Positions 24,872-59,474 of a stretch of 64,000 bases of DNA are shown in pieces (position 1 is the stretch's first letter; every line of letters starts with the position of its first letter). The notes below the pieces were generated by a model that had not been told where the DNA came from, did no database searches, and saw nothing but the letters and a program-made list of their open reading frames with translations. The stretch lies in the IMG/VR virus record IMGVR_UViG_3300025319_000005, positions 124,001-188,000 of that record; one strand, written 5' to 3'. Made by a program: the position numbers and the translations under genes.

Positions 24872-24898
24872 TTCTTTTAAATAGGAAATTAAAGAGGA

Positions 24899-24922
24899 AA
24901 GTCAGGAAAAATCCTGACTTTT
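24899..24922. terminator. hairpin / probable terminator
   Basis: AAAGTCAGGA-AAAA-TCCTGACTTT. Confidence 0.55.
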
Positions 24923-25329: not shown

Positions 25330-26364
25330 TTATCTAATTTCAACATTAAGACGCTCAATTGAGGTGAATTTTATATTTTCTTGGATTTCATTTATTTCTG
25401 TATTTGTTAAAGTGCGATCATTTGATTGAAAAACTATTCTATAACACTTAGATTGTTTACCTGTTTTTGGGTGAGCAAATTCATCTATTAATGAAACATT
25501 TTCTATTAAATCGCCTCCATTTTCTCTCACAATTTCACAAAAATTATTATGAGCGAAATTAGTATCTGCCCAAAATGCCAAATCTCTGGATATTGGTGGA
25601 TAACTTGAGTATTCCTTAAATTTAACTACATCTCCAGAAATAAATTGATTTATAAATCTTTCATCAGACGACCAAAAGTAACGTATGTCTGGTATTTCAA
25701 ATAAGAGGATAGACAATCTTTCCAAACCTAATCCAAAAGCAAATGCAGCTTTATTTTCTAAACCACAATTTTCCATAATTTTAGGTTGAACAACCCCTGC
25801 ACCAAGAACCTCTAACCATTTTCCCTGAAACATAACTTCAACTTCAAAAGATGGATGTGTAAAAGGAAAATAATCTTCATTGAAGCGGTATTCACAATTT
25901 GGAAAAAGAACATCAATAAGACCTTTTAATGTTTTTTTAAGTTCTTCTTCTGCGTTTTTTCCATCTTCAATTACACATACACCTTCCATTTGGTGAAAAA
26001 CCGGATAATGAGAGCTGTCAATATCATCTTTCCGATACACATCACCTGTAACTAAAAATTTTGTATGACCAGCAGTTAATAATTCATTTTGGTGAGCCGA
26101 TGTATGGGTTCGTAATATATGATTCTCATCAAAATAATAAGTATCACTCAATGAACGTGCAGGATGATCTTTTGGAATAAGTAGTTTATCAAAACAATTT
26201 TCAGTTGTAACCTTTGGATTTAAATCATCAAATTTTTTATATTCATCTCCAAAGTAATCATAGATTTTTCTTTTAATAATTTCTAAAGGATGATTTTTTT
26301 GATTGTGTAAATTTCTGCCAATTTTAGCTTGGATTCCGGGGGTAATGTTTGATTTAAATTCCAT
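25330..26364 (-). CDS. pheS: monomeric organellar (FARS2)-type phenylalanyl-tRNA synthetase
   Basis: IGRNLHNQKNHPL; LRTHTSAHQ; GDVYRKDDIDSSHYPVFHQMEG; GLGLERL..IPDIR; fused C-terminal FDX-ACB (RDLAFW..HPKTGKQSKCYRI); start reassigned to 26364. Confidence 0.93.
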   Translation of the reverse strand: MEFKSNITPGIQAKIGRNLHNQKNHPLEIIKRKIYDYFGDEYKKFDDLNPKVTTENCFDKLLIPKDHPARSLSDTYYFDENHILRTHTSAHQNELLTAGHTKFLVTGDVYRKDDIDSSHYPVFHQMEGVCVIEDGKNAEEELKKTLKGLIDVLFPNCEYRFNEDYFPFTHPSFEVEVMFQGKWLEVLGAGVVQPKIMENCGLENKAAFAFGLGLERLSILLFEIPDIRYFWSSDERFINQFISGDVVKFKEYSSYPPISRDLAFWADTNFAHNNFCEIVRENGGDLIENVSLIDEFAHPKTGKQSKCYRIVFQSNDRTLTNTEINEIQENIKFTSIERLNVEIR

Positions 26365-26451
26365 AAAATAATTGTTTAATTGTTTTTTGTACAAATTTAT
26401 AAAAATAATATTAATTAACAATATATTAAACGGAAATCTTTTTAGAATGTT

Positions 26452-27120
26452 TTAATCAAATTTCATATTCATTAGTTCTAACAATTCCTTGTCCATACTG
26501 TCAGAATATCCTGAGCTAAAAATGGCAAATTCCGTTATTAATTTTAAATATTTTGGAGACGGTTCTCCATTTGCCTTGCCCTTAGTCTGAATTGCCATTC
26601 CGGTATGAGTATCAATCTCAATTGTTACATGCGACTCATTCTTTTCGTCTCGTAAAGAAACTATTAACGAATTGCCTTGTTTCACTTTGGTAGTATATGT
26701 TCCTACGCAGTTTCTCATTGTTTCGCCTTCTGTTGCTAAATCTTCCACGTCCAAAAGAACAAAATAATGTATTCCATCACGGCATCTATATAATATTTTA
26801 TCATCCTCTTCTTTTTCTTTATTTTTAATAGTTTCATCAAATTTCATGTCGTCATGCCATACTTGTGCCAGTACATAAGCCTCCAAAAAAGATAAAGATA
26901 AGATATTTGGCTTTTCTTTTTTTGCCCAATCTATTATAAATAAAAATCCATCAAGATTATTCAGAAGAGTATCATCTTTCTTTACTTGACCTCCAATCCA
27001 AATATTAAATTTGTCAGTTCCGGATAAACGTCCGATTTCACTTATTTTTCTAACAAGCTCCTCATCAATTTTGAAGTTATCTAAGAGATATTTTTCTTTC
27101 TTTGTTAATTGCTCTGCCAT
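26452..27120 (-). CDS. PcfJ-like domain protein
   Basis: EGETMRNCVGTY..SHVTIEI..QTKGKAN. Confidence 0.7.
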   Translation of the reverse strand: MAEQLTKKEKYLLDNFKIDEELVRKISEIGRLSGTDKFNIWIGGQVKKDDTLLNNLDGFLFIIDWAKKEKPNILSLSFLEAYVLAQVWHDDMKFDETIKNKEKEEDDKILYRCRDGIHYFVLLDVEDLATEGETMRNCVGTYTTKVKQGNSLIVSLRDEKNESHVTIEIDTHTGMAIQTKGKANGEPSPKYLKLITEFAIFSSGYSDSMDKELLELMNMKFD

Positions 27121-27123: not shown

Positions 27124-27840
27124 CTATTTCTTAATGTAATTCAAAATTTGCTTAGCACAATCCTCAACATTAAATTTTTGTGTATCAACAATAATCTCTG
27201 GGTTTAATGGAATTTCATAAGGTGCTGTATCGTGCACTCCTGTAAAATCCTTTATCTCCCCACTCCTCGCCTTTGCATACAACCCTTTAACGTCTCTTTG
27301 TTCACAAATACTCAAAGGTGTATTGACATATATTTCAGTAAAATCCTTACTTATACTCCTTACATAATCTCTTGCTTCAGCATATGGAGAAATAAGACTT
27401 ACGACAGGTATTATACCTTGACTTTGTAAATAAACTGCCATTTTTCCAACATCTTGATTGTGTCTTATTCTTGCAGCTTTATCAAAGCCATAATTTTTAA
27501 ATATTTCTCTGATTTCATCTCCATCCAAAAGCATGGCGGCATGACCACCTTCTTTCAGACGAGTTAAAACTTCTTTTGCTATCGTTGTTTTTCCAGAACA
27601 TGAGAGCCCGGTAAAAAATAACATGCTCGTTCTATATTTTTTCTTTGTAAGTTTATCCCACACAATATCAAACCAATAATATGTAAGTATTTTTACAATA
27701 TTTTCCACAAGGCCAAGCATTATGGAGAGTTTTATGTTTCCAGTAAGAAGAAAAGAAACAACAAATGTTACAACAAAAGAATAAATTCTGTAAATTACAG
27801 ATTTTGTCATGTGTTTTATGTTAATTATTTTCCTTAGCAT
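27124..27840 (-). CDS. cysC: adenylylsulfate kinase with N-terminal DUF2061-like membrane domain
   Basis: FTGLSCSGKTT, LLDGDEIR, ICEQRDVKGLYAKARSGEIKDFTG. Confidence 0.92.
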   Translation of the reverse strand: MLRKIINIKHMTKSVIYRIYSFVVTFVVSFLLTGNIKLSIMLGLVENIVKILTYYWFDIVWDKLTKKKYRTSMLFFTGLSCSGKTTIAKEVLTRLKEGGHAAMLLDGDEIREIFKNYGFDKAARIRHNQDVGKMAVYLQSQGIIPVVSLISPYAEARDYVRSISKDFTEIYVNTPLSICEQRDVKGLYAKARSGEIKDFTGVHDTAPYEIPLNPEIIVDTQKFNVEDCAKQILNYIKK

Positions 27841-48854: not shown

Positions 48855-48933
48855 TACCTTCAATAGGATTCGAACCTACATTTTCAGCTCCGTTACACTT
48901 ATTGAGTCCGTAGCTCAATGTGGCTATAAAGGC
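48855..48933 (-). ncRNA. D-arm-less tRNA-Arg(ACG)-like RNA
   Basis: acceptor GCCTTTA/TGAAGGT, ATTGAG-CTACGGA-CTCAAT, canonical T arm GTAGG-TTCGAAT-CCTAT; no D arm, 21-nt extra region. Confidence 0.65.
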
Positions 48934-48934
48934 A

Positions 48935-49621
48935 TTATATTAATTCATATCGTTTTGCCCACTTTCTCACCGCAACATCACTAACTCCAAATTTTCTACC
49001 AAGTGCACAATATGAATTATTTTCTATCATTTCTTTTAATTCTTCTTTAGAGGGTCTGTTTTTTACTTTTCTAAAATTTAATCTAGGTACATATTTTCTC
49101 GTTGTTTTTTTATTTGTTTTATTTTTTTTTGCATTTTTTCTGTCTACGCCAATTTTACCACGGCAATGAGTTTCTAATGTGAAATTGCAGTTTGGACATA
49201 AAAATCTTAAGTTTTCTAATCTATTATCATTATTTATTCCGTTTTCGTGGTCAATAATTAAACTAATTTTTTTACCTCTCCATATTTCTCCTTGTCCACA
49301 TTCTTTACATTCATATTCTATCATGTTATTATCTCGTATTCTTTTTTTTAAACAAGCCCTTGCAACAGAACTGTTTTCACAAAAAATTTCTTCATCACTT
49401 TTCCTTAATAATCTGTCTTCATTAAACATTTTTTTAGCAAAATCACTACGGTTTAAAAAATGAGAAGTATCTATTGACCATTTATTTAAATTTGTTTTAA
49501 GTATTTTATAAGATGAAGAAGAATCGCTTCTTCCAGATTTTACTATAACATCTCTAAATGTGATGCTTTCAGATACTAATTTTTGTAATTCTTCTTTTGT
49601 ATATTCTTTATGTTCTTTCAT
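48935..49621 (-). CDS. HNH homing endonuclease
   Basis: CKECG..IIDHENGINNDNRLENLRFLCPNC; C-terminal HTH. Confidence 0.9.
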   Translation of the reverse strand: MKEHKEYTKEELQKLVSESITFRDVIVKSGRSDSSSSYKILKTNLNKWSIDTSHFLNRSDFAKKMFNEDRLLRKSDEEIFCENSSVARACLKKRIRDNNMIEYECKECGQGEIWRGKKISLIIDHENGINNDNRLENLRFLCPNCNFTLETHCRGKIGVDRKNAKKNKTNKKTTRKYVPRLNFRKVKNRPSKEELKEMIENNSYCALGRKFGVSDVAVRKWAKRYELI

Positions 49622-49678
49622 AATTCTAACTTATTTTAATGTAAATAGGTTAGAATTTTTTAATAAAGTAAATAGTTG

Positions 49679-49754
49679 AGGATAAGAAGAGAATTAAACT
49701 CCTGTTAAATATGTTTTGCAGACATATCCCGATTTCAACATTGGGTACTTATCC
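49679..49754 (-). tRNA. tRNA-Cys(GCA)
   Basis: GGATAAG/CTTATCC, CT-GCA-AA, U73, T loop TTTAATT. Confidence 0.8.
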
Positions 49755-49768
49755 TTGTAAAAATTAAA

Positions 49769-50038
49769 AAAGTAAAATCCTAAGTATAGCCGCGATTTTG
49801 TTCTATCTCATCATTTATCTGAAGGTATTGCTACCAACTGGAGACTTTAAACGTCTACCACGCACCTACCCGACTATCAACAACGTAAAGGTTCCCCGTC
49901 TACAGTCTGTTTGGCTTGCATCCTATGTTGCGGAAGTACATACGCTATTTGTTATAGCTTCTTCCTCCTTTTAAAAGATGTCGCGAACTTCCTCTCGATT
50001 TTAAGAATCGAGCGATGAGTCCTTCAGGATTTTACTTT
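49769..50038 (-). ncRNA. rnpB: RNase P RNA, compact A-type-like with reduced specificity domain
   Basis: P1 AAAGTAAAATCCT/AGGATTTTACTTT; CR-I GAGGAAGTTCGCGAC; GCAAGCCAAA; GGGTAGGTGC; AGATAAATGAT; CR-V ACAAAATCGCGGCTATA; P4 with bulged U. Confidence 0.88.
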
Positions 50039-50043
50039 TCTTG

Positions 50044-50115
50044 AGGCTCCACTGACAATCGATGTCAGGACTCAAATTTACAAGATTCGTGTTTTGCCAC
50101 TTAAACTACGGAGCC
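50044..50115 (-). tRNA. tRNA-Thr(TGT)
   Basis: 72-nt cloverleaf, CT-TGT-AA, T loop ATCGATT. Confidence 0.85.
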
Positions 50116-50131
50116 ATTATTTGTTCTTATG

Positions 50132-50205
50132 TGGAATCTACCGGCATTGAACCGGTCTCTCAGGCGTGCAAGGCAAGTGTTCTAAGCCAAATGAACTAAG
50201 ACCCC
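50132..50205 (-). tRNA. tRNA-Ala(TGC)
   Basis: G3:U70, CT-TGC-AC; anticodon stem has two mismatches. Confidence 0.85.
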
Positions 50206-50243
50206 AATTTAATTTGTTCAAAGTACAAATTATTAAAAACTTT

Positions 50244-50319
50244 TGGCGAGTATGACCGGTCCTGACCCGGCGACCTCCTCATAGACAGTGAGGCATTCTT
50301 CCAACTGAACTACACACTC
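50244..50319 (-). tRNA. tRNA-Asp(GTC)
   Basis: cloverleaf, CT-GTC-TA, G73, encoded CCA, T loop GTCAGGA. Confidence 0.9.
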
Positions 50320-50332
50320 ATTATTTTTTAAA

Positions 50333-50639
50333 AAAGTAAGACGCCATTTCGCTGATAGCGTTTTTTGTGTTCTGTTTAATGCGCCAAAGAACATCTGATT
50401 ATGTTCAGCATTTAGCGTTCATGCTTGGTTATTATAACATACTAACATTCCTAATATTGTCTGATTACCTATTTTGAGTTTGCATAGTAGGTTGATTTTT
50501 ATTTCCAGGGTAAAAATCAACAAACAAACCTAACGTCTGATAAACTTTATTTTTCATCCGGTAAACGTTTTGTACATTGTTTAGTTCATTAGGCTAAAAC
50601 AACACGTCTTTTTCACGGACAACATTAGTAACTTACTTT
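50333..50639 (-). ncRNA. unidentified ~307-nt structured RNA
   Basis: closing stem AAAGTAAG/CTTACTTT, perfect 11-bp hairpin GTTGATTTTTA/TAAAAATCAAC and further hairpins; no long ORF; lies between tRNAs; strand inferred from the operon. Confidence 0.65.
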
Positions 50640-50644
50640 TCTTG

Positions 50645-50718
50645 TAGTGCATCTGAGAATTGAACTCAGTACTTCCACGTTATCGGCGTGGCACTCTGGA
50701 CCGATGAGTTAATGCACT
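50645..50718 (-). tRNA. tRNA-Ile(GAT)
   Basis: cloverleaf, CC-GAT-AA (C33). Confidence 0.88.
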
Positions 50719-50732
50719 GTTTTTATTTAAAG

Positions 50733-50805
50733 TCTAGGTGGCCTGCTCCGACCAGGCGGTCTCCAGTTCCCAAAACTGGCGGATTTCCAACTTTCCCACA
50801 CCTAG
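50733..50805 (-). tRNA. tRNA-Pro(TGG)
   Basis: C1:G72, TT-TGG-GA, T loop GTCGGAG. Confidence 0.87.
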
Positions 50806-50842
50806 AAATTTTGTTTATCTTTCCAAACTGTCTTTTAATAAG

Positions 50843-50906
50843 AGTTCAAGCTCGGTTATCCACCGATTCGAAGGACTGCATTAGCCTTCTCTGCAGACAC
50901 TTGAAC
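50843..50906 (-). ncRNA. 64-nt tRNA-sized element lacking D and anticodon arms
   Basis: acceptor-like GTTCAAG/CTTGAAC, T-like hairpin TCGG-TGGATAA-CCGA, alternative central stems. Confidence 0.5.
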
Positions 50907-50908
50907 AT

Positions 50909-50984
50909 TGGAGCGAAAAACCAGGTTCAAACTGGCGACCCCCAGAGTGGAAATCTGGCGCTCTATCAACTGAGCTATTTTCGC
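50909..50984 (-). tRNA. tRNA-Gly(TCC)
   Basis: cloverleaf, TT-TCC-AC, U73, CCA. Confidence 0.9.
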
Positions 50985-51073
50985 TTATGTATATAATTCT
51001 CTCAGACCATATTACCAAGATTTACTTTGGACTCACCGTATTTTAAAAGTGAGCAGAATTGTATTTAATTAAA

Positions 51074-52021
51074 TTATTCTAATAATAATTCATCAATTGT
51101 TAAAATTGAATTTAAATTATCTATTGTTTTTTTAAATATCATTTTAACATTAATGTTGTTTTGTTCTAATACTAAACTCATTTTTGTTTTATCTATTATT
51201 GAATAATATCCTTTAGTTTCTATGTATAAGTTAAAATTTGGCAAATAAAAATCTGGCACATACGTTTTTTCAACACCTTCTTTAATATATTGAATATATA
51301 TTTTTCTAATCCACAATATTTTATTGTCATTTAACCATTGCGACATTTTTAATTCATATTTTCCTCTTAAAGAATATTCTTCACCAATAATATTTTTTTG
51401 TTTATAAAATTTCACATGTTTAAAATTGTTACTTATTTCATTTTCTTCTAACATCTTGGAGTGAGATTTGCTAATTTTCGATTTTTGTTCAGAAGAAAGT
51501 GGCTTTCCTAATTGGTGATGTATTCTCTTACCAGTAGCATACATTTCTTTTTGTTGCTCAGATGCTTTATTTACCCTATTATCAGTTTCCTTTGTAAGTC
51601 CTCTTGACCATCCCATTTTTGATTTAGTCTCTGCATTACTGTATTTTTTATTTTTATATTCAACTCCATCCGGTGTATGCATTTGAAATATATGACCACA
51701 TATACCAAGTTTGTGAAATATTAATTCGCAATGAGGACATTTATATTTATCTACATCAACTTTCCAAGATTCATCTACTGTTATTTGTTTTTTATTAACT
51801 GTATTACATTTATTATAATGCCTTTCAAAATTAGAAACAGAAATATTTTTATTACATTTATCACAACATTTTGTGTTTTTAGGTTTTCCAAGTAAAGAAA
51901 TACTTAAATTTTTTAATCTTTCTTTTAACTTTGGATTAGATTCACAATTTACTATATGAGCACCAAATTGTTGTGGGATCTCAAACTCAAAAGACTCTTT
52001 GCAATGCGGACAAGTTTTCAT
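51074..52021 (-). CDS. homing endonuclease-like protein (Zn fingers + PD-(D/E)xK)
   Basis: CPHC and CDKC fingers; YVPDFYLP..LYIETKGY. Confidence 0.8.
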   Translation of the reverse strand: MKTCPHCKESFEFEIPQQFGAHIVNCESNPKLKERLKNLSISLLGKPKNTKCCDKCNKNISVSNFERHYNKCNTVNKKQITVDESWKVDVDKYKCPHCELIFHKLGICGHIFQMHTPDGVEYKNKKYSNAETKSKMGWSRGLTKETDNRVNKASEQQKEMYATGKRIHHQLGKPLSSEQKSKISKSHSKMLEENEISNNFKHVKFYKQKNIIGEEYSLRGKYELKMSQWLNDNKILWIRKIYIQYIKEGVEKTYVPDFYLPNFNLYIETKGYYSIIDKTKMSLVLEQNNINVKMIFKKTIDNLNSILTIDELLLE

Positions 52022-52090
52022 ACTTTTTTATTATAAATAGTATAAAAAATTGCAGGTTAGAAAATTGTTAGCACGTTATTGTTTTTTGAG

Positions 52091-52173
52091 TGGGAGTTGA
52101 TGGAGACGAGCCACCCGAGTTTTAAAACAACCGATTTACAGTCGGTCCCGCTACCCCTACGGAATAAACTCCC
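52091..52173 (-). tRNA. tRNA-Tyr(GTA)
   Basis: CT-GTA-AA, long variable arm, T loop CTCGTCT. Confidence 0.87.
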
Positions 52174-52185
52174 ATTTTAATGTTG

Positions 52186-52257
52186 CACAGACGGTTATAA
52201 TCGAAATAACTACGTGTAGTTTTTGGAGAACTCACCGACACCAAGCCTGTCGTCTGT
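52186..52257 (-). tRNA. tRNA-Trp(CCA)
   Basis: CT-CCA-AA, G73, canonical T arm; weak D arm. Confidence 0.75.
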
Positions 52258-52296
52258 ATTTTATCTATTTTTTAAGCTGTAAGATAATTAGCTAAG

Positions 52297-52368
52297 TAGC
52301 GAAAACTGGAATCGAACCAATGTAGACACAGCTTATGAGACTGGTGGGAAACCAACATCCTTTTCGCA
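52297..52368 (-). tRNA. tRNA-Met(CAT), initiator-like
   Basis: 1:72 mismatch, CT-CAT-AA; weak D arm. Confidence 0.75.
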
Positions 52369-52381
52369 ATATATTTTTTTG

Positions 52382-52454
52382 TAGCCCCTGCCGGTCCTGA
52401 CCCGACGACTTCATTCATGTAAAAAATGCACTCTACCAACTGAGTTAAGGGGCT
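52382..52454 (-). tRNA. tRNA-Val(TAC)
   Basis: cloverleaf, TT-TAC-AT, T loop GTCAGGA. Confidence 0.88.
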
Positions 52455-52459
52455 ATTAG

Positions 52460-52533
52460 TAGCATATATCAGAATCAAACTGATGACCTTCCTCATATGA
52501 AAAGGACGCTCTAATCAACTGAGCTAATATGCT
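52460..52533 (-). tRNA. tRNA(CAT): elongator Met or Ile2
   Basis: cloverleaf, TT-CAT-AT; identity not resolvable from sequence. Confidence 0.85.
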
Positions 52534-52543
52534 ATTTAAAAAG

Positions 52544-52615
52544 AGCGGGTGATGAGGATTAAACTCACGGCCTCATCCTTGGCAAGGATGCGCTCTATCG
52601 CTGAGCTACACCCGC
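52544..52615 (-). tRNA. tRNA-Gly(GCC)
   Basis: cloverleaf, TT-GCC-AA, U73. Confidence 0.92.
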
Positions 52616-52691
52616 TTTTTTGATTATCAATATGTCAAATAACTCTGCAAACTTTTAAGTCATTGCTCGACTTGTAAACTTTTTAAGCAAC

Positions 52692-52727
52692 AAAAAACCC
52701 GAACCTTTTTTAAGTCCGGGTGTGTTA
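52692..52727 (-). terminator. attenuator terminator of tRNA operon 1
   Basis: ACCCGGAC/GTTCGGGT + U6; 5' arm overlaps the antiterminator partner TAACACACCC. Confidence 0.85.
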
Positions 52728-52760
52728 TGTTGTTTCCCTTTTAAGTTTTTATATCTTACT

Positions 52761-52889
52761 TCATGAAACAAAATGTTTTAACACACCCATATTATCGCGG
52801 CTATAATCGCCAGGGGTAATACACGCATACCCGACTGTCGGCATGACTGCCCAAATCGTTGTAATTGTTGTATGTGTTAAATTTTTCAT
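52761..52889 (-). CDS. attenuator leader peptide 1 (42 aa)
   Basis: MKNLTHTTITTIWAVMPTVGYACITPGDYSRDNMGVLKHFVS; between promoter and terminator upstream of tRNA operon 1. Confidence 0.85.
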   Translation of the reverse strand: MKNLTHTTITTIWAVMPTVGYACITPGDYSRDNMGVLKHFVS

Positions 52890-52916
52890 TGAAGATGTTT
52901 TCTTTTTAATTAAACT

Positions 52917-53002
52917 TAAATAGTATAAAAAATTATTTTCTCAAATATTTCTTTCGACCAATTATAACGCAAAGATATAATTAAAGTTTAATAAAAAGCA
53001 AA
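52917..53002 (-). promoter_or_regulatory. tandem promoters of tRNA operon 1
   Basis: TTTG-N21-TATCTTTG (52970-53002) and TATTTA (52917-52922). Confidence 0.75.
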
Positions 53003-53031
53003 TTTATTTTCATTTATTTTTTATTTAACTT

Positions 53032-53094
53032 GTAAAATCCTGATATTCAGCTAAATAATTTTTTGTAAAATCCTAAACATAATCGTAAAATCCT
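53032..53094. repeat. three GTAAAATCCT direct repeats
   Basis: at 53032, 53065 and 53085. Confidence 0.75.
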
Positions 53095-53201
53095 GTCATT
53101 GATAATATTAAACAAAAAATCCACAATTTTTTTAAGCAAGGGAGCCAACGAATTTATTCGTTGGAGTATGTCAGTCAATAATATTTCCTTGCAATTTGTT
53201 T

Positions 53202-53405
53202 TTACCAACCTTCTTTAGCAACTCCGGATGCAACTGCAGCTTCTGCGTTAGCAGAGCTCATTATAGCACACATTTTATGTCCTTCTTTAGTTTCTCCTTT
53301 ACATACGTATCCACCTTTTGCGTTTTTAGATATGATAGGATTAACGAAAGTTTGTTTGCTTTTTAATTTCATACAATATCCTTCTAATACGATTAATGTG
53401 CTCAT
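53202..53405 (-). CDS. small DUF5679-like protein (paralog of 54800-55000)
   Basis: YCMKLK..KGGYVCKGETKEGHKM..SANAEAAVASGV. Confidence 0.7.
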   Translation of the reverse strand: MSTLIVLEGYCMKLKSKQTFVNPIISKNAKGGYVCKGETKEGHKMCAIMSSANAEAAVASGVAKEGW

Positions 53406-53509
53406 GATTTTTAGTTTTAAGTTTTTTATAAATATGAAATATTTTATAAAACAAGTTTTAATATATGTTTATGTTCTAAATTAGCTTATATTTATATAAA
53501 AACAAGCTC

Positions 53510-53680
53510 ATGAAAAATTTAAAAAAAATAATAGAAGAAACAGTAAGTAAAGTTCTGGGTGAAGGCGATTTTTTAACACATCAAATAAAAAATTCAATAA
53601 GCGTGTTAAATAATGTTTTCAAAGACAACTTAGTTGCAAAGATAAACGAAACAAATGATAAAGATAAACGAAACAAATGA
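53510..53680 (+). pseudogene. 5' part (leader) of the ART-like gene, detached by a 22-nt duplication
   Basis: MKNLKKIIEETVSKVLGE..; removing one repeat copy fuses it in frame to 53655-54263. Confidence 0.7.
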
Positions 53681-53681
53681 T
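53638..53681. repeat. 22-nt perfect tandem duplication
   Basis: AAAGATAAACGAAACAAATGAT x2. Confidence 0.95.
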
Positions 53682-54263
53682 AGTGTTATTGATGTTTATA
53701 TTAAGAAATACAATATAAATGCATTAACAAAAATAGATAAAACGATAGAAAATTTAGGATATTTTATTTCTATTTTTAGTATAAATGGATTTCAAAAGAA
53801 ATTTAACAAAGATTCATTTTTTAAAAAAATAAAAGACTTAAAAGAATTAACTCCAATATACCTAAAGCTGGAGAAAAAAATGGACTCAAATGAAGATATA
53901 GATACAATTATCCCATCTATGTTATATCACATTACACATGAAAGACATCTCGCAAAAATCAAGAAAATAGGTTTAGTTCCAAAATCTAAATCTAAAAAAT
54001 CAGCTCATCCTGAAAGAATATATTTAGCGTGGAATGAAGAATCTGCTATAAAATTAGTAAAAGAATTTTCAGATTTAGAATACGAATTTGAACATAATTA
54101 TGTTTTATTAAAAATTGACACAAGTAAAATTTCTGAGTTTAGACGTGATAAAAATTTCAAATTACATAATGACCCAAACTTTACAGATGGTTATTTTACA
54201 TATGATAATATACCTCCTGCTGCAATAAATTTTGAAAATATGAAATTAATAAACCTTGAATAA
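53655..54263 (+). CDS. Tpt1/KptA-like ADP-ribosyltransferase-fold protein
   Basis: LYHITH....IKKIGLVP, IYLA, LLKID, NIPPAAI. Confidence 0.6.
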   Translation: MIKINETNDSVIDVYIKKYNINALTKIDKTIENLGYFISIFSINGFQKKFNKDSFFKKIKDLKELTPIYLKLEKKMDSNEDIDTIIPSMLYHITHERHLAKIKKIGLVPKSKSKKSAHPERIYLAWNEESAIKLVKEFSDLEYEFEHNYVLLKIDTSKISEFRRDKNFKLHNDPNFTDGYFTYDNIPPAAINFENMKLINLE

Positions 54264-54795
54264 TATGAGTTTGTTAGAAAAAATTAAAATAGAAAGATTT
54301 ATTTCGGAAGATATTGACGAAGTTAAACAGTTAATTAAAAACATACATTCAAAAATCTGTTTTAATGAAACAAATATTCACATTTATAATAATTTAATGT
54401 ATAAACTTTTTTTTAACGGTTATAGTTTTCTTTTGGATTTTTCATTAAAAGTAACATATAGAAAAAAAATAATAGGAGTTATGTTATTATCTGACTTTTC
54501 GTTTTATTGGCTATTAGAAACATATAAAGAAGATGACAAAAACATAAGCAAAAAAATAAAAAAATATAAGAACAAAGAAGGTTTAAGGAGTGTTTTTTTT
54601 GGAATTGATAGGAAATATCAAAAAAAAGGATTAGGCTCTAAAATGATTGAATATATACAAAAAAACTATAAGCAGTTTGATTATTTGTGGGGAATTCAAC
54701 ATAAAGAGATTTCAAATATGGAATTTTTCTTAAAAAGAAGAAAAGTTGTTGCAGAAATAGGAAATTCCGTATATACTGTGCAGGATTTGAAATAA
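54256..54795 (+). CDS. GNAT acetyltransferase
   Basis: FGIDRKYQKKGLGSKMI. Confidence 0.75.
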   Translation: MNNMSLLEKIKIERFISEDIDEVKQLIKNIHSKICFNETNIHIYNNLMYKLFFNGYSFLLDFSLKVTYRKKIIGVMLLSDFSFYWLLETYKEDDKNISKKIKKYKNKEGLRSVFFGIDRKYQKKGLGSKMIEYIQKNYKQFDYLWGIQHKEISNMEFFLKRRKVVAEIGNSVYTVQDLK

Positions 54796-54799
54796 AAGC

Positions 54800-55000
54800 T
54801 TAAAACCCTTCTTTAGTAACTCCAGATGCTACGGCAGCTTCTGCGTTGGCTTTACTCATTAATAGACTCATCTTATGTCCATCTTTACTTTCGCCCTTTG
54901 CAATGTACCCACCCTTTTTAGTTAAGCTAATAACAGCATTAACCATTACTCCCTTTGATTTTGTCTTAAGACAATAAGCCTCTAATACTACTTTTTCCAT
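54800..55000 (-). CDS. small DUF5679-like protein (paralog of 53202-53405)
   Basis: YCLKTK..KGGYIAKGESKDGHKM..KANAEAAVASGV. Confidence 0.7.
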   Translation of the reverse strand: MEKVVLEAYCLKTKSKGVMVNAVISLTKKGGYIAKGESKDGHKMSLLMSKANAEAAVASGVTKEGF

Positions 55001-55038
55001 TTTTTTTGGTTTTATAGTAAATATTAAAAATTTTTATT

Positions 55039-55386
55039 TTAAGTCGGTGATGTTATTAATTGAAATTTAGTAGGATGCGACAATCTATAATCAACTTGTC
55101 TTTCATCAACATATTCTCGATAATTAACATAACCTTTAACATATGGAGTTACGCGAGCATCGAAAAAAATAACATCTCCGTTATTTAACGCTCCTAATTT
55201 CTCAAATCCTTTTGTTTTGTTAAACCACAAATGGTCAGTAACAATTTTATCAGACTTATCCTTAATATCTTTTAAGAGTATTGTTTCTACAGGATATCCA
55301 TGATAATTCTTCTTTGTTCCAAATTTCTCAAATATTCCACTAAATCTGTCCCGTATATTTTCTATTTTTTCTAAATCTTTTCTCAT
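55039..55386 (-). CDS. conserved phage hypothetical protein
   Basis: VTDHLWF..FDARV..YVKGY..DYRLSHPTK. Confidence 0.6.
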   Translation of the reverse strand: MRKDLEKIENIRDRFSGIFEKFGTKKNYHGYPVETILLKDIKDKSDKIVTDHLWFNKTKGFEKLGALNNGDVIFFDARVTPYVKGYVNYREYVDERQVDYRLSHPTKFQLITSPT

Positions 55387-55955
55387 TGATAAAACCCTTT
55401 TCTTTTTATATAATTAGCAACTTGCGGTGCTAAAAAATCTTTCACATCTCTATTTTCCTTTATCTCGTTTCGGATAAATGTGGAAGACATTTCAATTAAA
55501 TTAACATCAAACATTTTTACTTTTGGATGTAAAATTAGATTACCGCCATCGCTGGAGCTACGTGAATATACATAAATTTGATATTCTTCAAGTATTTTTT
55601 GATAATCTTTCCACTTGTGTAAGTTTTCTAAATTATCAGTTCCCATTATTATAACAAATTCATTTTCTTTAAATGTTTCTTTTAATAAATTGAGCGTATC
55701 TATAGTATACGAAGGTTTTGATAAATTAAATTCAATATCACTGGCTCTCATATGTTCATTATCAATTAATGCCATATTAACCATTTTTAACCTTTCTTTT
55801 TCTGATAGTAGAGAATTTTTATCCTTGAGAGGATTGTGAGGAGATATTATAAACCACACACATTCCAATTCGGTATGTTCAAGCATGTAAGACGCCAATA
55901 TTGTGTGACCGTTGTGGATTGGATTAAAACTACCGAAGAATAAACCTATTTTCAT
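55383..55955 (-). CDS. nadD: nicotinate-nucleotide adenylyltransferase
   Basis: FFGSFNPIHNGH, SYTIDTL, IMGTDN, WKDY, MSSTFIR; start reassigned to 55955. Confidence 0.93.
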   Translation of the reverse strand: MKIGLFFGSFNPIHNGHTILASYMLEHTELECVWFIISPHNPLKDKNSLLSEKERLKMVNMALIDNEHMRASDIEFNLSKPSYTIDTLNLLKETFKENEFVIIMGTDNLENLHKWKDYQKILEEYQIYVYSRSSSDGGNLILHPKVKMFDVNLIEMSSTFIRNEIKENRDVKDFLAPQVANYIKRKGFYQ

Positions 55956-56037
55956 ATGTGATATTATTAAACGAAGATAATCATTATAATGTTGCAACTA
56001 ACTTTTTTAAACTATTTATTGAAAAAAGAAATATAAA

Positions 56038-57411
56038 ATGAATAATAAAGAACTAAGAAAATCGATAAGAAGGATTTTAAAGGAAAATCTTGAAAATTCT
56101 GATTGGGTGAATGCCAGTGATGCTCAAAAAGCTGCAATGCAAGATATAGACTCAGAAGATGAATTTGAACACTTAGGAACTAATAGGTTTGAAAAAGATT
56201 TTGATGTTGAAGATTTTCTATATGATTTAGAAGCTCAAAAAAATATGTCTGAGCCATCTGTAAAAAGATTAGAAAAACAAATTGGGCAATTAAAAAGATT
56301 TGGAAAGGGTTCTTTGAATGAATTATCGCCAGAAATAAGACAATCCGCACTTAAAAAAGCTGTTGATTATATTGAACAACCTGGAGATACCTATCATAAA
56401 GACCCGCTCCAATATATTAAGAAAAAAAACCAAGCAAATTCATTTATTTCTCATGTTAATCCTGAGTTAAAAAAAGAAGCTATGGAAATAGCAAAAATGA
56501 TAGATGTAAATTGTGAAAGTCGTATAGAAAAAGAAGCGGTAGGAAGTACACTTGAACCAAATGTTGTATTATATTTTGGTCAAAACATTGCAGATTTAAG
56601 TAATCAAATACTTAAAATTGCCATTAAAAAAGATAATCATACATGGGAAACCAAAAAATTTATTCCTGAAAATATTCAAAGAAGATTGGCTAATTTTATA
56701 AAAAAGATTCAAACAAAAGAAATATCTAGTCCAGTTAAACAATTGAATGAGAGATTTCTTGGTGGATGGCATTATTTCGCAACTCCAGAAGGTAAAGAAG
56801 AATATATTAAAGACCTCGAGTCTAAAAAGATTAATGCAAAAGGAGAAGAATTAGAGCAAATTGAAAAAGAACTTAAAAAGTTAAAATCAATAAAACCAAA
56901 ATCCTTAAAAGAAGAAACATCAAAACTTGACAAGCCAAAAGATTCTGCAGGAAATTCAATATCATCCGGAGTGAGAGTTGAAGATTTAGAGTCGGGTAGT
57001 GCTGGACGAGTTGAGAGATTTGGTATTGACGACAAAGGACAATTAACAGTTCATGTTGCTTGGATAACAAAATATGGACAGATAGCTCCAAAGTCCATTG
57101 TTTATCCCAAAAATATAATTGTTAAAGATTCTGCAAAAAAGATAACAGACGAAGGAATTAAAGATACTTTAAAAAATATTTATAAAGAATTGAATCCTAT
57201 TGAAAAATGGAAACAAATGAAAGAAAATCGTAAAAAGCTCGAAAAAGAAGTTAGTGATTTACGAAGAGAAGTTTCTGAAAAGGAAAAAGAATTAGAAAAA
57301 ATAGTGAATAGTAATCATATTAAAGCTGATGTAAGTAATGATGTTGACGAAGGAATTGGAGCTGGATTATCACTTCCAATAAAAAAAGGAGCCGGAAGCA
57401 GATTTAAATAA
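56038..57411 (+). CDS. multi-module protein with shared leader
   Basis: MNNKELRKSIRRILKE; LNE/LNE/LKEE/VDE junctions; TATTTA at 56013-56018. Confidence 0.6.
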   Translation: MNNKELRKSIRRILKENLENSDWVNASDAQKAAMQDIDSEDEFEHLGTNRFEKDFDVEDFLYDLEAQKNMSEPSVKRLEKQIGQLKRFGKGSLNELSPEIRQSALKKAVDYIEQPGDTYHKDPLQYIKKKNQANSFISHVNPELKKEAMEIAKMIDVNCESRIEKEAVGSTLEPNVVLYFGQNIADLSNQILKIAIKKDNHTWETKKFIPENIQRRLANFIKKIQTKEISSPVKQLNERFLGGWHYFATPEGKEEYIKDLESKKINAKGEELEQIEKELKKLKSIKPKSLKEETSKLDKPKDSAGNSISSGVRVEDLESGSAGRVERFGIDDKGQLTVHVAWITKYGQIAPKSIVYPKNIIVKDSAKKITDEGIKDTLKNIYKELNPIEKWKQMKENRKKLEKEVSDLRREVSEKEKELEKIVNSNHIKADVSNDVDEGIGAGLSLPIKKGAGSRFK

Positions 57412-57418
57412 AACTATT

Positions 57419-58432
57419 TTGGAAAATAAGTTAAGAAAATATATTCAAAAAATCCTTCAAGAATCTTTAAATACAGAAGACATTCCTGAAGACATCCCCA
57501 TTAAAAAAGATTTAAAATTCACTGAGACCTCAAGAGGTTCGCATCATGGCCAGCAGGATTTAACAGCTTATGCCACAATAGAGGGAATAGTAGTTGGCTA
57601 TGTTGAATATTCTATATTTCAGAACGAAATCCACATAGAAATGATTGAAGTTGTTGAAGAACAAAAAAGACAAGGAATAGCAACAAAATTATTTCATTTT
57701 ATAAGACTTAAAAATTCTGGTATGAAAATTATTCCAGGATATTCAACCGAAGAAGGAAGTAAATTTTATAATGCTTATAAAAGCAAAAAACTAAAAGAAG
57801 ATATAAATGTTCCTATAAATGTTGGAGATACCGTTCTTGGTGGCCGTTTTAAAAATAAAAAAATTATTATTAAAGATATAGGAAAGTCAGATAAGGGCGA
57901 CATTACAATTAATGACAAGCCTCTTTTAAAAGTTAGGATTCCAAAGAAAATAAATGAAGAAAAATTGACATGTTTATATATTCATGGTTTAGGAGCTGAA
58001 ATATCTGATGATATTAAAAATTCTCTTTCCAAATACAATCTCATATATCCCAAAATAAACTACGACAAAACAACAAAACCATATTATCAATGTTTAGAAA
58101 TATTAAATAAAGATAAGGTGGATTTTATAATAGGTCATTCTATAGGTGGAGTTATGGGTTATTATTTAGCTAAAGAAACAAATATTCCAGCTTTATTATT
58201 ATGTCCGGCATTTGGAGATGAATATAAAGTTCTCACAAGTAAGTTAGTTAAAGATAATAACCCAAAAATAGTTGTTATCATAGGAAAAAAAGATGATGAA
58301 GTTGATAATAAAAAAGTTAAATCCACTTTAGAAAATCAACCCAATTGTGTTATTAAAGAATTAAATATCGGACATGATATTACAGAAAAAAATCTGATTT
58401 TATTTGCTGATGGTTTTGTTGAAAATTTATAA
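57419..58432 (+). CDS. leader + GNAT + small beta module + alpha/beta hydrolase
   Basis: TTG start; KLRKYIQKILQE; KRQGIATKL; LKE and INEE junctions; GHSIGG nucleophile elbow, terminal GHD. Confidence 0.7.
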   Translation: MENKLRKYIQKILQESLNTEDIPEDIPIKKDLKFTETSRGSHHGQQDLTAYATIEGIVVGYVEYSIFQNEIHIEMIEVVEEQKRQGIATKLFHFIRLKNSGMKIIPGYSTEEGSKFYNAYKSKKLKEDINVPINVGDTVLGGRFKNKKIIIKDIGKSDKGDITINDKPLLKVRIPKKINEEKLTCLYIHGLGAEISDDIKNSLSKYNLIYPKINYDKTTKPYYQCLEILNKDKVDFIIGHSIGGVMGYYLAKETNIPALLLCPAFGDEYKVLTSKLVKDNNPKIVVIIGKKDDEVDNKKVKSTLENQPNCVIKELNIGHDITEKNLILFADGFVENL

Positions 58433-58459
58433 TTGAAATTATTATTTTTTAATATAAAG

Positions 58460-58532
58460 TGCTTCCAGTTGGACTTGAACCAACGACCCGAAAATTAAGA
58501 ATTTCCTACTCTACCATCTGAGCTATGAAAGC
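58460..58532 (-). tRNA. tRNA-Lys(CTT)
   Basis: cloverleaf, TT-CTT-AA. Confidence 0.92.
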
Positions 58533-58620
58533 AATAATTTATAATGTATTATAGATATATGTTGAGTAAAATCCACAGAATGTTCTATTTTATGGATTGT
58601 GCTCAACAAATATGTAATTG

Positions 58621-58694
58621 TGTGTCCGACAAGATTTGAACTTGTGACCTCCGCATTAAAAGTGCGGTATTCTAACCAGCTGAATTACGAACAC
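58621..58694 (-). tRNA. tRNA-Lys(TTT)
   Basis: cloverleaf, CT-TTT-AA. Confidence 0.92.
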
Positions 58695-58698
58695 ATAG

Positions 58699-58785
58699 TG
58701 TACCCAGAAAGATTCGAACTTTCAACGGCCTTTCGGCTCCCCACAGGGTAAAAACCTGTTGCTCTACCAATTGAGCCATGGGTAC
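58699..58785 (-). tRNA. tRNA with Lys(TTT) anticodon and 19-nt variable arm
   Basis: ACAGG-TTTTTAC-CCTGT; variable region GGGGAGCCGAAAGGCCGTT. Confidence 0.85.
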
Positions 58786-58789
58786 AAAT

Positions 58790-58826: not shown

Positions 58827-58841
58827 GGACTTATAAAAAAG

Positions 58842-59461: not shown

Positions 59462-59474
59462 ATATTAAATTTGT

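What the first reader, a model, noticed from the sequence alone, without database searches (positions are those of the whole stretch)
25330..26364. Phage-encoded mitochondrial-type monomeric PheRS
Seen: a 344-aa class II catalytic core directly fused to an FDX anticodon-binding domain, with segments resembling eukaryotic organellar FARS2 (GRNLHNQ..HPL; HPKT..S.CYRI). Established: ordinary bacterial PheRS is an (alpha-beta)2 heterotetramer, and the alpha/B8 monomer is the organellar form, which lacks an editing domain. The window also holds four GAA-anticodon RNAs. Inference: a self-contained Phe-charging module, and of interest for the origin of organellar PheRS.
Basis: partly seen in the sequence, partly recalled or inferred. 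Interest (0 to 1): 0.75.

Follow-up and report, generated by a model that had tools for sequence, protein, structure and literature searches.

The report
Huge phage carries mitochondrial-type PheRS
A roughly 500 kb bacteriophage from groundwater and sediment encodes an intact one-chain phenylalanyl-tRNA synthetase of the kind otherwise known from mitochondria and giant viruses. This shows that the "organellar" form is widespread in huge phages and gives a concrete way to test where the mitochondrial enzyme came from.

Summary
The ORF is real: 25330-26364, minus strand, 344 aa. It is a class II PheRS catalytic core fused to an FDX-ACB anticodon-binding domain.

- **Family:** it passes the curated mitochondrial PheRS model (378 bits, cut-off 258). 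It matches human mitochondrial PheRS at E 1e-103. A pLDDT 96 model superposes on 3CMQ over its full length (TM 0.92).
- **Residues:** it keeps all 41 columns shared by canonical and organellar PheRS, and all four residues that read G34.
- **Genome:** a tailed huge phage, not a eukaryote or giant virus. Evidence is PHROG content, a syntenic 519 kb relative with terminal repeats and a terminase, no NCLDV capsid found, and no pheT.
- **Not a chimera:** the locus recurs unchanged in at least 17 metagenomes.
- **Corrections:** the window holds one tRNA-Phe(GAA), not four (three in the 212 kb record). The monomer is also not exclusively organellar. Giant viruses (published in 2024), many huge-phage lineages and a rare Bacteroidota paralogue (NCBIfam SrmL) have it.
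- **Phylogeny:** the window clade is sister to giant-virus PheRS (98/89). A direct eukaryote sistership is rejected (AU 0.016). Eukaryotes sit beside another huge-phage pair, but their nesting among phages is only suggestive (AU 0.066).

Most likely function is genuine, editing-free Phe-tRNAPhe synthesis for an AT-rich phage proteome.

The parts
25330..26364 (-). Coding sequence of the monomeric PheRS (344 aa plus stop codon), PheRS-M type
   Evidence: ORF. TIGR00469 378 bits, above the 258 cut-off. Human mtPheRS E 1e-103. AF2 pLDDT 96.3. 3CMQ TM 0.92.
25642..26319 (-). Class II catalytic core (residues 16-241). Contains motif 2 R111, F123-H124-Q125, FPF 166-168 and motif 3 G211-x-G213-x-E215-R216.
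   Evidence: Pfam PF01409, 200.9 bits. All 41 columns conserved in both canonical PheS and organellar PheRS are retained.
25333..25608 (-). FDX-ACB (beta-subunit B8-like) anticodon-binding domain, residues 253-344. G34 readers are D294, F296, S305 and R344.
   Evidence: Pfam PF03147, 82 bits. Matches pheT profile positions 694-798. Residues equivalent to human D364/F366/S375/R414 (PMC7540514) are conserved.
26365..26421 (-). In-frame upstream extension from a TTG. Probably not translated, so it would be 5' leader.
   Evidence: Homologues of 340-345 aa start at the motif that follows the ATG at 26364. The extension is not conserved.
61012..61089 (-). tRNA-Phe(GAA) with A73 discriminator, 78 nt, with a long variable loop. 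It is the only tRNA-Phe in the window and a candidate substrate.
   Evidence: ARAGORN. Rfam tRNA 53.3 bits.
48855..61089 (-). tRNA gene array: 16 ARAGORN genes, one more from Rfam, and four more at a relaxed threshold. Co-directional with the PheRS gene.
26452..27120 (-). PcfJ-like protein immediately upstream. This neighbour is conserved in synteny.
   Evidence: Pfam PF14284, 58 bits. Same order in the 519 kb relative.
27124..27840 (-). DUF2061 membrane domain fused to adenylylsulfate (APS) kinase. This neighbour is conserved in synteny.
   Evidence: Pfam PF01583, 164.6 bits, and PF09834. Same order in L001/L002.
24898..24921 (-). Terminator-like hairpin downstream of the PheRS gene and the 89-aa ORF (24981-25250). 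Possible end of the transcription unit.
   Evidence: Consensus scan only: 5 sites found against 0.8 expected.

Best explanation
The gene encodes a functional, single-chain phenylalanyl-tRNA synthetase of the PheRS-M (mitochondrial) architecture. It is carried by a tailed huge phage of about 500 kb found in groundwater, sediment and soil.

Mechanism, inferred from the human enzyme, whose residues and fold it keeps:
1. The class II core binds Phe and ATP and forms Phe-AMP.
2. The C-terminal FDX-ACB domain swings from the closed state (as modelled, like 3CMQ) to an open state (like 3TUP).
3. That domain reads G34 of tRNA-Phe through D294, F296, S305 and R344.
4. Phe is transferred to A76.

There is no beta subunit and no editing domain, so accuracy rests on the active site alone.

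Likely substrates are the phage's own tRNA-Phe(GAA) genes (three in the record, all with A73) and probably the host's tRNA-Phe.

Inferred role: to keep Phe-tRNAPhe supplied to an AT-rich phage proteome (Phe 5.1% of residues, 84% TTT codons) independently of the host's two-gene heterotetramer. It would be part of the translation and tRNA toolkit typical of huge phages. The host is probably a Bacteroidota bacterium; this is an inference.
For: **Shown:**
- Domain architecture and the curated family score.
- E 1e-103 to human mtPheRS.
- 41 of 41 universally conserved catalytic columns kept.
- All four G34-reading residues kept (with PMC7540514).
- AF2 pLDDT 96.3, pTM 0.91.
- Full-length TM 0.92 to 3CMQ, against 0.59 (catalytic core only) to bacterial PheS.
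- No pheT in five phage records, two of them judged complete, and a single PheRS-type gene in each.
- Phage identity: 51 PHROG families among 43 window ORFs. The syntenic 77%-identical relative lies in a 518,809 bp genome with terminal repeats and a terminase, and no NCLDV capsid match.
- At least 88 related cluster representatives (90%-identity clusters) at 60-87% identity, full length and without truncation, in metagenomes. This indicates purifying selection.
- The locus is identical in independent metagenomes.

**Supporting the inferred role:**
- Three tRNA-Phe genes in the record.
- Amino-acid and codon usage.
- In other huge-phage lineages the gene sits beside RNA ligases, a CCA-adding enzyme, PNKP, Tpt1, a GluRS-type synthetase, PTH2 and a SpoU methylase.
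- The 519 kb relative also has an Asn/Asp/Lys-type synthetase.

**Host clue:**
- Shine-Dalgarno motifs are nearly absent upstream of 229 ORFs.
- The bacterial homologues are mainly in Bacteroidota.
Against: - No biochemical or expression data exist. Activity, tRNA preference and monomeric state are inferred by homology.
- A bacterial sister family (SrmL) with the same architecture is labelled a 'mystery ligase' by NCBI curators, so the architecture alone does not prove canonical PheRS function.
- An exclusive window-clade + SrmL grouping is not rejected (AU 0.13).
- In this phage the gene's direct neighbours (PcfJ-like, APS kinase, unknowns) are not translation genes.
- The tRNA-Phe in the window is structurally atypical.
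- The host assignment rests on indirect signals only.
Confidence: 0.85

Rival explanations
1. The protein is not a housekeeping-type PheRS. It would be an SrmL-like, neofunctionalised ligase. For example, it might charge a non-canonical tRNA-like RNA or use another amino acid, like the rare second PheS-related gene of some Bacteroidota.
For: - It scores 251.6 bits on the SrmL model.
- It shares 50-57% identity with chromosomal SrmL genes of Sphingobacterium, Elizabethkingia, Chryseobacterium, Pedobacter and Myroides.
- A window-clade + SrmL grouping is not rejected (AU 0.13).
- The phage encodes unusual tRNA-Phe variants.
Against: - It falls below the SrmL cut-off (300 bits) and well above the pheS_mito cut-off. 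True SrmL proteins show the reverse ranking.
- SrmL deviates at three columns that are invariant in canonical and organellar PheRS (H87Q, E174Q, E215D, window numbering). The phage protein keeps H, E and E.
- In the best tree SrmL is a separate 100/100 clade, and the window clade groups with giant-virus PheRS.
Confidence: 0.08
2. The gene is eukaryotic or giant-virus DNA. On this reading it entered the contig through contamination, mis-assembly or mis-classification, and it is not a phage gene.
For: - The first named database hit is Tupanvirus, at 60% identity.
- Giant-virus MAG contigs carry relatives at 47-54% identity.
- The window clade is sister to the giant-virus clade.
- Neither Pfam terminase or sheath model tried (Terminase_6C, Phage_sheath_1) matched in the 212 kb fragment itself.
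Against: - Synteny of five genes around the PheRS is conserved in a 519 kb genome with direct terminal repeats and a phage terminase.
- No NCLDV capsid match was found in any searched carrier record. That search had no positive control, so this point is weak on its own.
- Window ORFs hit 51 PHROG families, including phage endonucleases, a phage metallopeptidase and a terminase PHROG.
- Genes are tightly packed with overlapping stops and starts.
- Single contigs from two samples span the locus. Contigs from a separate groundwater study tile it and bridge both gene junctions with zero differences.
- The locus is present in at least 17 samples.
- There is no presequence and there are no introns.
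Confidence: 0.02
3. The enzyme is an active PheRS whose main selective value is counter-defence or takeover, not codon supply. It would keep Phe-tRNAPhe charging going when the host PheRS or host tRNA-Phe is shut off, cleaved or inhibited during infection. The shut-off could come from host abortive-infection systems or from the phage itself.
For: - In other huge-phage lineages the gene is embedded in tRNA repair modules (T4 Rnl1, Rnl2-type ligase, PNKP, Tpt1, CCA-adding enzyme). From established knowledge of T4 Pnk/Rnl1 versus PrrC, such modules counter anticodon nucleases.
- The phage carries its own divergent tRNA-Phe set.
Against: - No repair genes lie next to the gene in this window.
- No Phe-specific host nuclease or PheRS-targeting toxin was identified here.
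- This reading is compatible with the main explanation rather than exclusive of it.
Confidence: 0.25

Closest known systems
Human and eukaryotic mitochondrial PheRS (FARS2; PheRS-M; PDB 3CMQ, 3TUP; TIGR00469)
   Same: - Single chain with an alpha-type class II core fused to an FDX-ACB (B8-like) domain.
- No editing module.
- About 44-50% identity.
- Full-length structural match (TM 0.92) in the closed conformation.
- Identical catalytic columns and identical G34-reading residues.
   Different: - No N-terminal targeting presequence. Window residue 4 aligns to residue 27 of the human crystallised chain.
- It lacks about 40 residues of eukaryotic insertions (387 alignment columns for 344 residues).
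- It is encoded by a phage.
- It is phylogenetically outside the eukaryote clade. An exclusive sistership is rejected (AU 0.016).
Giant-virus (Nucleocytoviricota) PheRS, e.g. Tupanvirus. Described in PMC11304981 as grouping with organellar PheRS.
   Same: - Same compact monomer, 340-400 aa.
- 54-60% identity.
- Sister clade of the window's clade: 98/89 in the 90-row tree and 89/88 in the 104-row tree.
- Both types of carrier have AT-rich genomes.
   Different: - The carrier here is a tailed bacteriophage with a phage terminase, not an NCLDV.
- The 2024 study did not include phage sequences; the word 'phage' does not occur in its text.
SrmL, 'PheS-related mystery ligase' (NCBIfam NF051887) of some Bacteroidota
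   Same: - Same two-domain monomer of about 344 aa.
- 50-57% identity.
- G34-reading residues conserved.
- It also exceeds the pheS_mito cut-off.
   Different: - SrmL is a second gene alongside canonical pheS in bacterial chromosomes.
- It is rare: 0 of 300 other sampled Bacteroidota genomes pass the cut-off.
- It carries Q/Q/D at three universally conserved H/E/E columns.
- The window protein misses the SrmL cut-off (251.6, below 300).
Canonical bacterial PheRS (PheS/PheT, (alpha-beta)2)
   Same: - Catalytic core is homologous (PF01409; 35-40% identity; TM about 0.59 over the core).
- The FDX-ACB domain is homologous to the C-terminal B8 domain of PheT.
   Different: - No coiled-coil N-terminus and no beta subunit, so no B3/B4 editing site.
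- TIGR00468 scores 196 bits, below the 237 cut-off.
- It is separated by a long 100/100 branch in the tree.
Aminoacyl-tRNA synthetases of huge phages (Al-Shayeb et al. 2020, PMC7162821)
   Same: A huge phage with many tRNAs and translation genes. The general rationale is charging phage tRNAs.
   Different: [quoted passage not shown] Here the enzyme is of a type that the sampled hosts' phylum almost never uses.

Membership tests
PheRS-M (mitochondrial-type monomeric PheRS; TIGR00469) | Alpha-type class II PheRS catalytic core with motifs 1-3 and the Phe-binding FPF element | tested here: met
   PF01409, 200.9 bits. 41 of 41 conserved columns retained, including R111, F123-H124-Q125, F166-P167-F168 and R216.
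PheRS-M (mitochondrial-type monomeric PheRS; TIGR00469) | FDX-ACB (B8-like) anticodon-binding domain fused C-terminally in the same polypeptide | tested here: met
   PF03147, 82 bits, at residues 253-344. Matches pheT profile positions 694-798.
PheRS-M (mitochondrial-type monomeric PheRS; TIGR00469) | Whole-protein score above the curated equivalog cut-off | tested here: met
   378 bits against a cut-off of 258.35.
PheRS-M (mitochondrial-type monomeric PheRS; TIGR00469) | Three-dimensional arrangement of the domains as in the solved monomer | tested here: met
   AF2 pLDDT 96.3. Foldseek 3CMQ TMq 0.92, rmsd 2.9, full length. The open-state 3TUP gives TM 0.69.
PheRS-M (mitochondrial-type monomeric PheRS; TIGR00469) | G34 recognition residues (human D364, F366, S375, R414) | tested here: met
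   Window D294, F296, S305, R344. Residue roles are from PMC7540514.
PheRS-M (mitochondrial-type monomeric PheRS; TIGR00469) | No beta subunit or editing module in the same genetic system | tested here: met
   In five phage records, two judged 100% complete, the pheT profile matches only the monomer's own C-terminal domain, apart from one 18-bit fragment in G001.
PheRS-M (mitochondrial-type monomeric PheRS; TIGR00469) | Phe-specific aminoacylation of tRNA-Phe as a monomer | not testable with these tools
   Needs enzyme assays and a measurement of oligomeric state.
PheRS-M (mitochondrial-type monomeric PheRS; TIGR00469) | Organellar targeting presequence and eukaryotic nuclear gene. This defines 'organellar', not the enzyme type. 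| tested here: not met
   No N-terminal extension. Encoded in a phage genome. Lies outside the eukaryote clade.
SrmL (NF051887) | Score above the curated cut-off of 300 bits | tested here: not met
   251.6 bits. Chromosomal Bacteroidota members score 317-336.
SrmL (NF051887) | Clade membership and clade-specific substitutions (Q87, Q174, D215 in window numbering) | tested here: not met
   The window has H87, E174 and E215. SrmL forms a separate 100/100 clade. However, an exclusive window + SrmL grouping is not rejected by AU (p 0.13).
Canonical bacterial PheS (TIGR00468) | Score above the cut-off, and pairing with PheT | tested here: not met
   196.3 bits, below 237.45. No pheT found.
Tailed huge phage (Caudoviricetes, over 200 kb) | Phage packaging or structural hallmark genes, phage-like gene content, and genome length | tested here: met
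   The terminase large subunit Pfam is found in the syntenic 518,809 bp relative with terminal repeats (36 bits, cut-off 22). A terminase PHROG and 50 other PHROG families are hit in the window. The identical protein occurs on a 503,412 bp contig. In the 212 kb record itself the two Pfam hallmarks tried (Terminase_6C, Phage_sheath_1) were not found.
Nucleocytoviricota (giant virus) | NCLDV major capsid protein | tested here: inconclusive
   PF04451 has no match in the own record or in 17 related records. The search had no positive control. Phage hallmarks argue against NCLDV.

The most novel reading that the evidence does not exclude
The monomeric 'mitochondrial' PheRS may be an invention of bacteriophages, or of their bacterial hosts. 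Eukaryotic organellar PheRS and giant-virus PheRS would then each descend from huge-phage lineages. That would make FARS2 another phage-derived replacement in mitochondria, alongside the T7-like RNA polymerase, the Twinkle helicase and DNA polymerase gamma.

In the rooted tree, eukaryotes (99/95) are sister to a huge-phage pair (90/91) and nested among phage lineages. Giant viruses are sister to the window's phage clade (98/89).
Probability: 0.3. Interest if true: 0.85.

Novelty: new member of a known kind. Interest (0 to 1): 0.62.

Why it matters
1. It removes the assumption that the one-chain PheRS is an organellar speciality. The form is common in huge phages: at least three terminase-bearing lineages, with dozens of sequence clusters. 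It also exists as a rare chromosomal paralogue in Bacteroidota.
2. It changes the framing of a published inference that giant-virus PheRS came 'putatively from organelles'. Once phage sequences are included, the giant-virus clade groups with a phage clade.
3. It makes the origin of mitochondrial PheRS testable with real sister groups. This is a case parallel to the known phage ancestry of the mitochondrial transcription and replication enzymes.
4. In practice, a 344-residue, presequence-free, editing-free PheRS with its own tRNA-Phe set is an attractive minimal enzyme for biochemistry and for orthogonal translation work.

Tried and rejected
- **GenBank phages:** a megablast of 12 kb around the gene found no match. 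tblastn found only canonical pheS fragments, none covering 80% or more of the query.
- **Hallmark searches in the 212 kb record:** Terminase_6C and Phage_sheath_1 found nothing. The record is a fragment, so I used the complete relative instead.
- **NCLDV capsid searches:** they found nothing anywhere, but they lack a positive control. I treat them as weak evidence only.
- **Literature:** searches for phage or bacterial monomeric PheRS and for SrmL found no description.
- **SrmL neighbourhood:** two Bacteroidota loci showed no conserved partners, so they give no functional clue.
- **Terminase PHROG hit in the window:** scanning 10 larger ORFs did not locate it.
- **Eukaryotic contamination or chimera:** considered and rejected.
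- **Alternative genetic code:** considered and rejected. ORFs are intact under code 11 and all three stop codons are used.
- **'Four GAA RNAs':** considered and rejected.
- **Deep branching order:** not resolved. The backbone of the 104-row tree is a polytomy, and three AU tests were non-significant.
Full report
**Observation.**

The window holds an ORF at 25330..26421 on the minus strand. Homologues of 340-345 aa start at the same conserved N-terminal motif, so this is the likely start.

- Pfam finds a PheRS-type class II core (PF01409, residues 16-241, 200.9 bits) followed by an FDX-ACB domain (PF03147, residues 253-344, 82 bits).
- NCBIfam's curated equivalog for mitochondrial PheRS (TIGR00469) scores 378 bits against a cut-off of 258. 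The canonical alpha-subunit model stays below its cut-off (196 against 237). The beta-subunit model matches only with its last 105 positions, the B8 domain.
- Human mitochondrial PheRS chains (3CMQ and others) match at E about 1e-103 over the whole length.

The part of the observation that fails is the 'four GAA-anticodon RNAs'. ARAGORN and Rfam both find one tRNA-Phe(GAA) in the window, at 61012-61089 on the minus strand. Relaxed settings add no credible one. The full 212.6 kb record has three, and two of them lie outside the window.

**What the genome is.**

The window is bases 124001-188000 of a 212,632 bp IMG/VR virus record with 29.4% G+C. The identical protein also occurs on a 503,412 bp contig.

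- A 77%-identical homologue lies in the same gene order (APS kinase, PcfJ-like, PheRS, a protein of about 505 aa, a protein of about 862 aa). That genome is 518,809 bp, has direct terminal repeats, and is judged complete.
- That genome encodes a phage large terminase (PF03237, 36 bits, cut-off 22). No NCLDV capsid match was found.
- Forty-three window ORFs hit 51 PHROG families. These include HNH endonucleases, DNA methyltransferases, thymidylate synthase, phage endonuclease I, a phage metallopeptidase and a terminase PHROG.
- Genes are tightly packed, with overlapping stops and starts.

So this is a tailed huge phage, not a giant eukaryotic virus or eukaryotic DNA.

The locus is not an assembly chimera. 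It recurs with 85-100% of sampled words in at least 17 sediment, soil and groundwater samples. Single contigs from two samples span 23300-28700. Contigs from a separate groundwater study tile the stretch and bridge both gene junctions without a single difference.

**Is it a working PheRS?**

- I aligned 111 sequences and listed every column conserved in both canonical bacterial PheS and organellar PheRS. The window protein keeps all 41. They include the motif 2 and motif 3 arginines, the F-H-Q segment and the FPF element.
- In human mtPheRS, G34 of tRNA-Phe is read by D364, F366, S375 and R414, and D364G abolishes activity (PMC7540514). These align to window D294, F296, S305 and the C-terminal R344. 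They are conserved in every group.
- An AlphaFold2 model built on a 57-sequence alignment has pLDDT 96.3 and pTM 0.91.
- The model superposes on closed-state human mtPheRS 3CMQ with TM 0.92 over the full query. Bacterial alpha chains cover only the catalytic core (TM about 0.59), and the open tRNA-bound state 3TUP gives 0.69.
- None of five related phage records, two of them complete, contains a pheT gene. Each has a single PheRS-type gene.
- The protein has no room for an editing module. From established knowledge of mitochondrial PheRS, it should lack proofreading of Tyr-tRNAPhe.
- At least 88 related cluster representatives (90%-identity clusters) at 60-87% identity, all full length, indicate purifying selection.

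No biochemical activity was tested. Activity, substrate preference and monomeric state are inferred.

**Why a phage would carry it.**

- The record encodes three distinct tRNA-Phe(GAA) genes, all with an A73 discriminator. The one in the window has an atypical anticodon stem and variable loop.
- It also carries a tRNA array of at least 16 genes on the same strand.
- The predicted proteome is rich in Lys (11.6%), Ile (8.9%), Asn (6.9%) and Phe (5.1%). 84% of Phe codons are TTT.
- The 519 kb relative also encodes an Asn/Asp/Lys-type class II synthetase.
- In other huge-phage lineages the monomeric PheRS lies beside T4-type RNA ligase 1, an Rnl2-type ligase, a CCA-adding enzyme, PNKP, Tpt1, a GluRS-type synthetase, PTH2 and a SpoU methylase.

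I therefore infer that the gene is part of a translation-autonomy toolkit. It would secure Phe-tRNAPhe for an AT-rich proteome without depending on the host heterotetramer. A counter-defence role is a compatible alternative.

Shine-Dalgarno motifs are almost absent upstream of 229 ORFs (GGAG 1% against 6% background). From general knowledge this is typical of Bacteroidota and their phages. Together with the bacterial homologues described next, it points to a Bacteroidota host. This is an inference.

**The monomer is not only organellar.**

A scan of 185,579 prokaryotic species genomes found full-length relatives at 50-57% identity in chromosomes of Sphingobacterium, Elizabethkingia, Chryseobacterium, Pedobacter and Myroides, including a complete 4.0 Mb chromosome, and in several Bacteroidota MAGs.

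- These pass NCBIfam NF051887, 'PheS-related mystery ligase SrmL' (317-336 bits, cut-off 300). They also pass the pheS_mito cut-off.
- The same genomes keep a canonical pheS.
- SrmL is rare. Among 300 further evenly sampled Bacteroidota genomes none reaches the cut-off, and the centre genome has two copies.
- Two neighbourhoods showed no conserved partners, and I found no literature on it.
- SrmL differs from all other groups at three universally conserved catalytic columns (H87Q, E174Q, E215D). The phage enzyme does not share these changes and scores below the SrmL cut-off (251.6).

The phage protein therefore looks like a genuine PheRS rather than an SrmL-type derivative.

Giant viruses were already known to carry this type. 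A 2024 study grouped nucleocytovirus PheRS with organellar PheRS and proposed an ancient transfer 'putatively from organelles', but it included no phage sequences (PMC11304981). Al-Shayeb et al. [quoted passage not shown] Searches for monomeric PheRS in phages or bacteria found no description.

**Phylogeny.**

I used IQ-TREE (LG+C20+F+G4 PMSF, ultrafast bootstrap / SH-aLRT) and rooted the trees with nine canonical bacterial PheS sequences.

In the 104-row tree:
- All monomers form one clade (100/100).
- The window clade is supported at 97/93.
- The giant-virus clade (100/99) is its sister at 89/88.
- SrmL is a separate 100/100 clade.
- The backbone is a polytomy.

I then removed rows of unverified origin, leaving 90 rows:
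- Eukaryotes are monophyletic (99/95). Anchors are Branchiostoma, Salpingoeca, Irineochytrium, Artemisia, Vitrella and Amoebophrya.
- Giant viruses are monophyletic (100/99).
- The window clade plus giant viruses are sisters (98/89).
- The eukaryote clade is sister to a huge-phage pair (L013/L011, 90/91). L013 lies in a 322 kb record with a terminase scoring 51 bits and a phage-like neighbourhood.
- That group is nested among phage and bacterial lineages.

AU tests gave the following results:

| Constraint tested | delta lnL | p-AU | Outcome |
|---|---|---|---|
| Window clade + eukaryotes as an exclusive clade | 51.9 | 0.016 | rejected |
| Window clade + SrmL | 21.7 | 0.13 | not rejected |
| All non-eukaryotic monomers as one clade (eukaryotes sister rather than nested) | 4.8 | 0.066 | not rejected |
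| Giant viruses + eukaryotes as an exclusive clade | 41.6 | 0.085 | not rejected |

Caveats:
- The outgroup branch is long.
- Many metagenomic rows are labelled by context only.
- Phage and giant-virus genomes are both AT-rich, although the composition check did not flag the window-clade rows.

**Verdict.**

It needs three corrections: the tRNA-Phe count, the non-exclusivity of the monomer to organelles, and the nearest relatives being giant-virus rather than eukaryotic enzymes.

In molecular terms this is a new member of a known kind (PheRS-M). I found no published description of its phage carriage. The evolutionary reading is the most interesting one not excluded by the data: that organellar and giant-virus PheRS descend from phage-borne monomers. 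I put it at about 0.3.

Noticed in passing
window 27124-27840 (-), plus one or two unlocalised ORFs among the 43 scanned: The window may carry a sulfation module. An APS kinase is fused to a DUF2061 membrane domain. One or two window ORFs hit the Sulfotransfer_1 and Sulfotransfer_3 Pfam families. The APS kinase fusion is conserved in synteny next to the PheRS in the 519 kb relative.
   Followed up: no
window 26452-27120, 38462-40573, 10354-12561 (all -): There are three PcfJ-like proteins (PF14284) of very different lengths (222, 703 and 735 aa) in one window. One is the conserved upstream neighbour of the PheRS.
   Followed up: no
whole record G000 (229 ORFs), including the window: Shine-Dalgarno motifs are nearly absent upstream of start codons (AGGAG 0%, GGAG 1%), and leaders are A-rich. 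This suggests SD-independent initiation, as in Bacteroidota.
   Followed up: partly
L029, L030, L034, L037-L042 and others (Bacteroidota chromosomes): SrmL, the 'PheS-related mystery ligase', is a chromosomal PheRS-M-like monomer that sits alongside canonical pheS.
- It is rare: 0 of 300 other sampled Bacteroidota genomes pass the cut-off.
- Sphingobacterium tabacisoli has two copies.
- It differs at three otherwise invariant catalytic columns.
- It has no conserved neighbours in the two loci examined.

   Followed up: partly
L070 (62 kb contig) and L071 (494 kb contig): In other huge-phage lineages the monomeric PheRS lies in tRNA repair and maturation clusters. These hold T4 Rnl1, an Rnl2-type ligase, a DNA/RNA ligase, a CCA-adding enzyme, PNKP, Tpt1 and a GluRS-type synthetase. 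In L071 a terminase fragment lies next to a NUMOD homing endonuclease.
   Followed up: partly
window 48855-48933 (-); 58698-58785 (-); 52090-52368 (-); 60732-60820 (-): The window has several atypical tRNA genes.
- Rfam calls a tRNA at 48855-48933 that ARAGORN reports only with an intron at a relaxed threshold.
- There is an 88-nt tRNA-Lys(TTT).
- Tyr, Trp, Met and Ser calls appear only at a relaxed threshold.

   Followed up: partly
window 12567-13679 (-): The thymidylate synthase ORF is 370 aa, but its match covers only about 280 positions of the PHROG profile. This suggests an insertion of roughly 90 residues.
   Followed up: no
L043 (59.5 kb contig of a Nitrospiraceae MAG) and L046 (12.8 kb contig of a Berkiella MAG): Both contigs carry virus-type monomers (pheS_mito 356 and 283 bits; below the SrmL cut-off). 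L046 groups 100/100 with a huge-phage lineage, so these are probably mis-binned viral contigs. No canonical pheS was found in the Nitrospiraceae MAG.
   Followed up: partly
window, ORF not localised: One of the 43 window ORFs matches the terminase large subunit family phrog_5989 (E 3.4e-13). It is not among the ten larger ORFs rescanned.
   Followed up: partly
window 24567-24590, 25272-25289, 26495-26518, 26812-26833, 28064-28081, 28123-28144: Other contigs in the same metagenomes share short 18-24 nt matches at these places. They may be short repeated motifs in the phage or its relatives, or chance matches.
   Followed up: no
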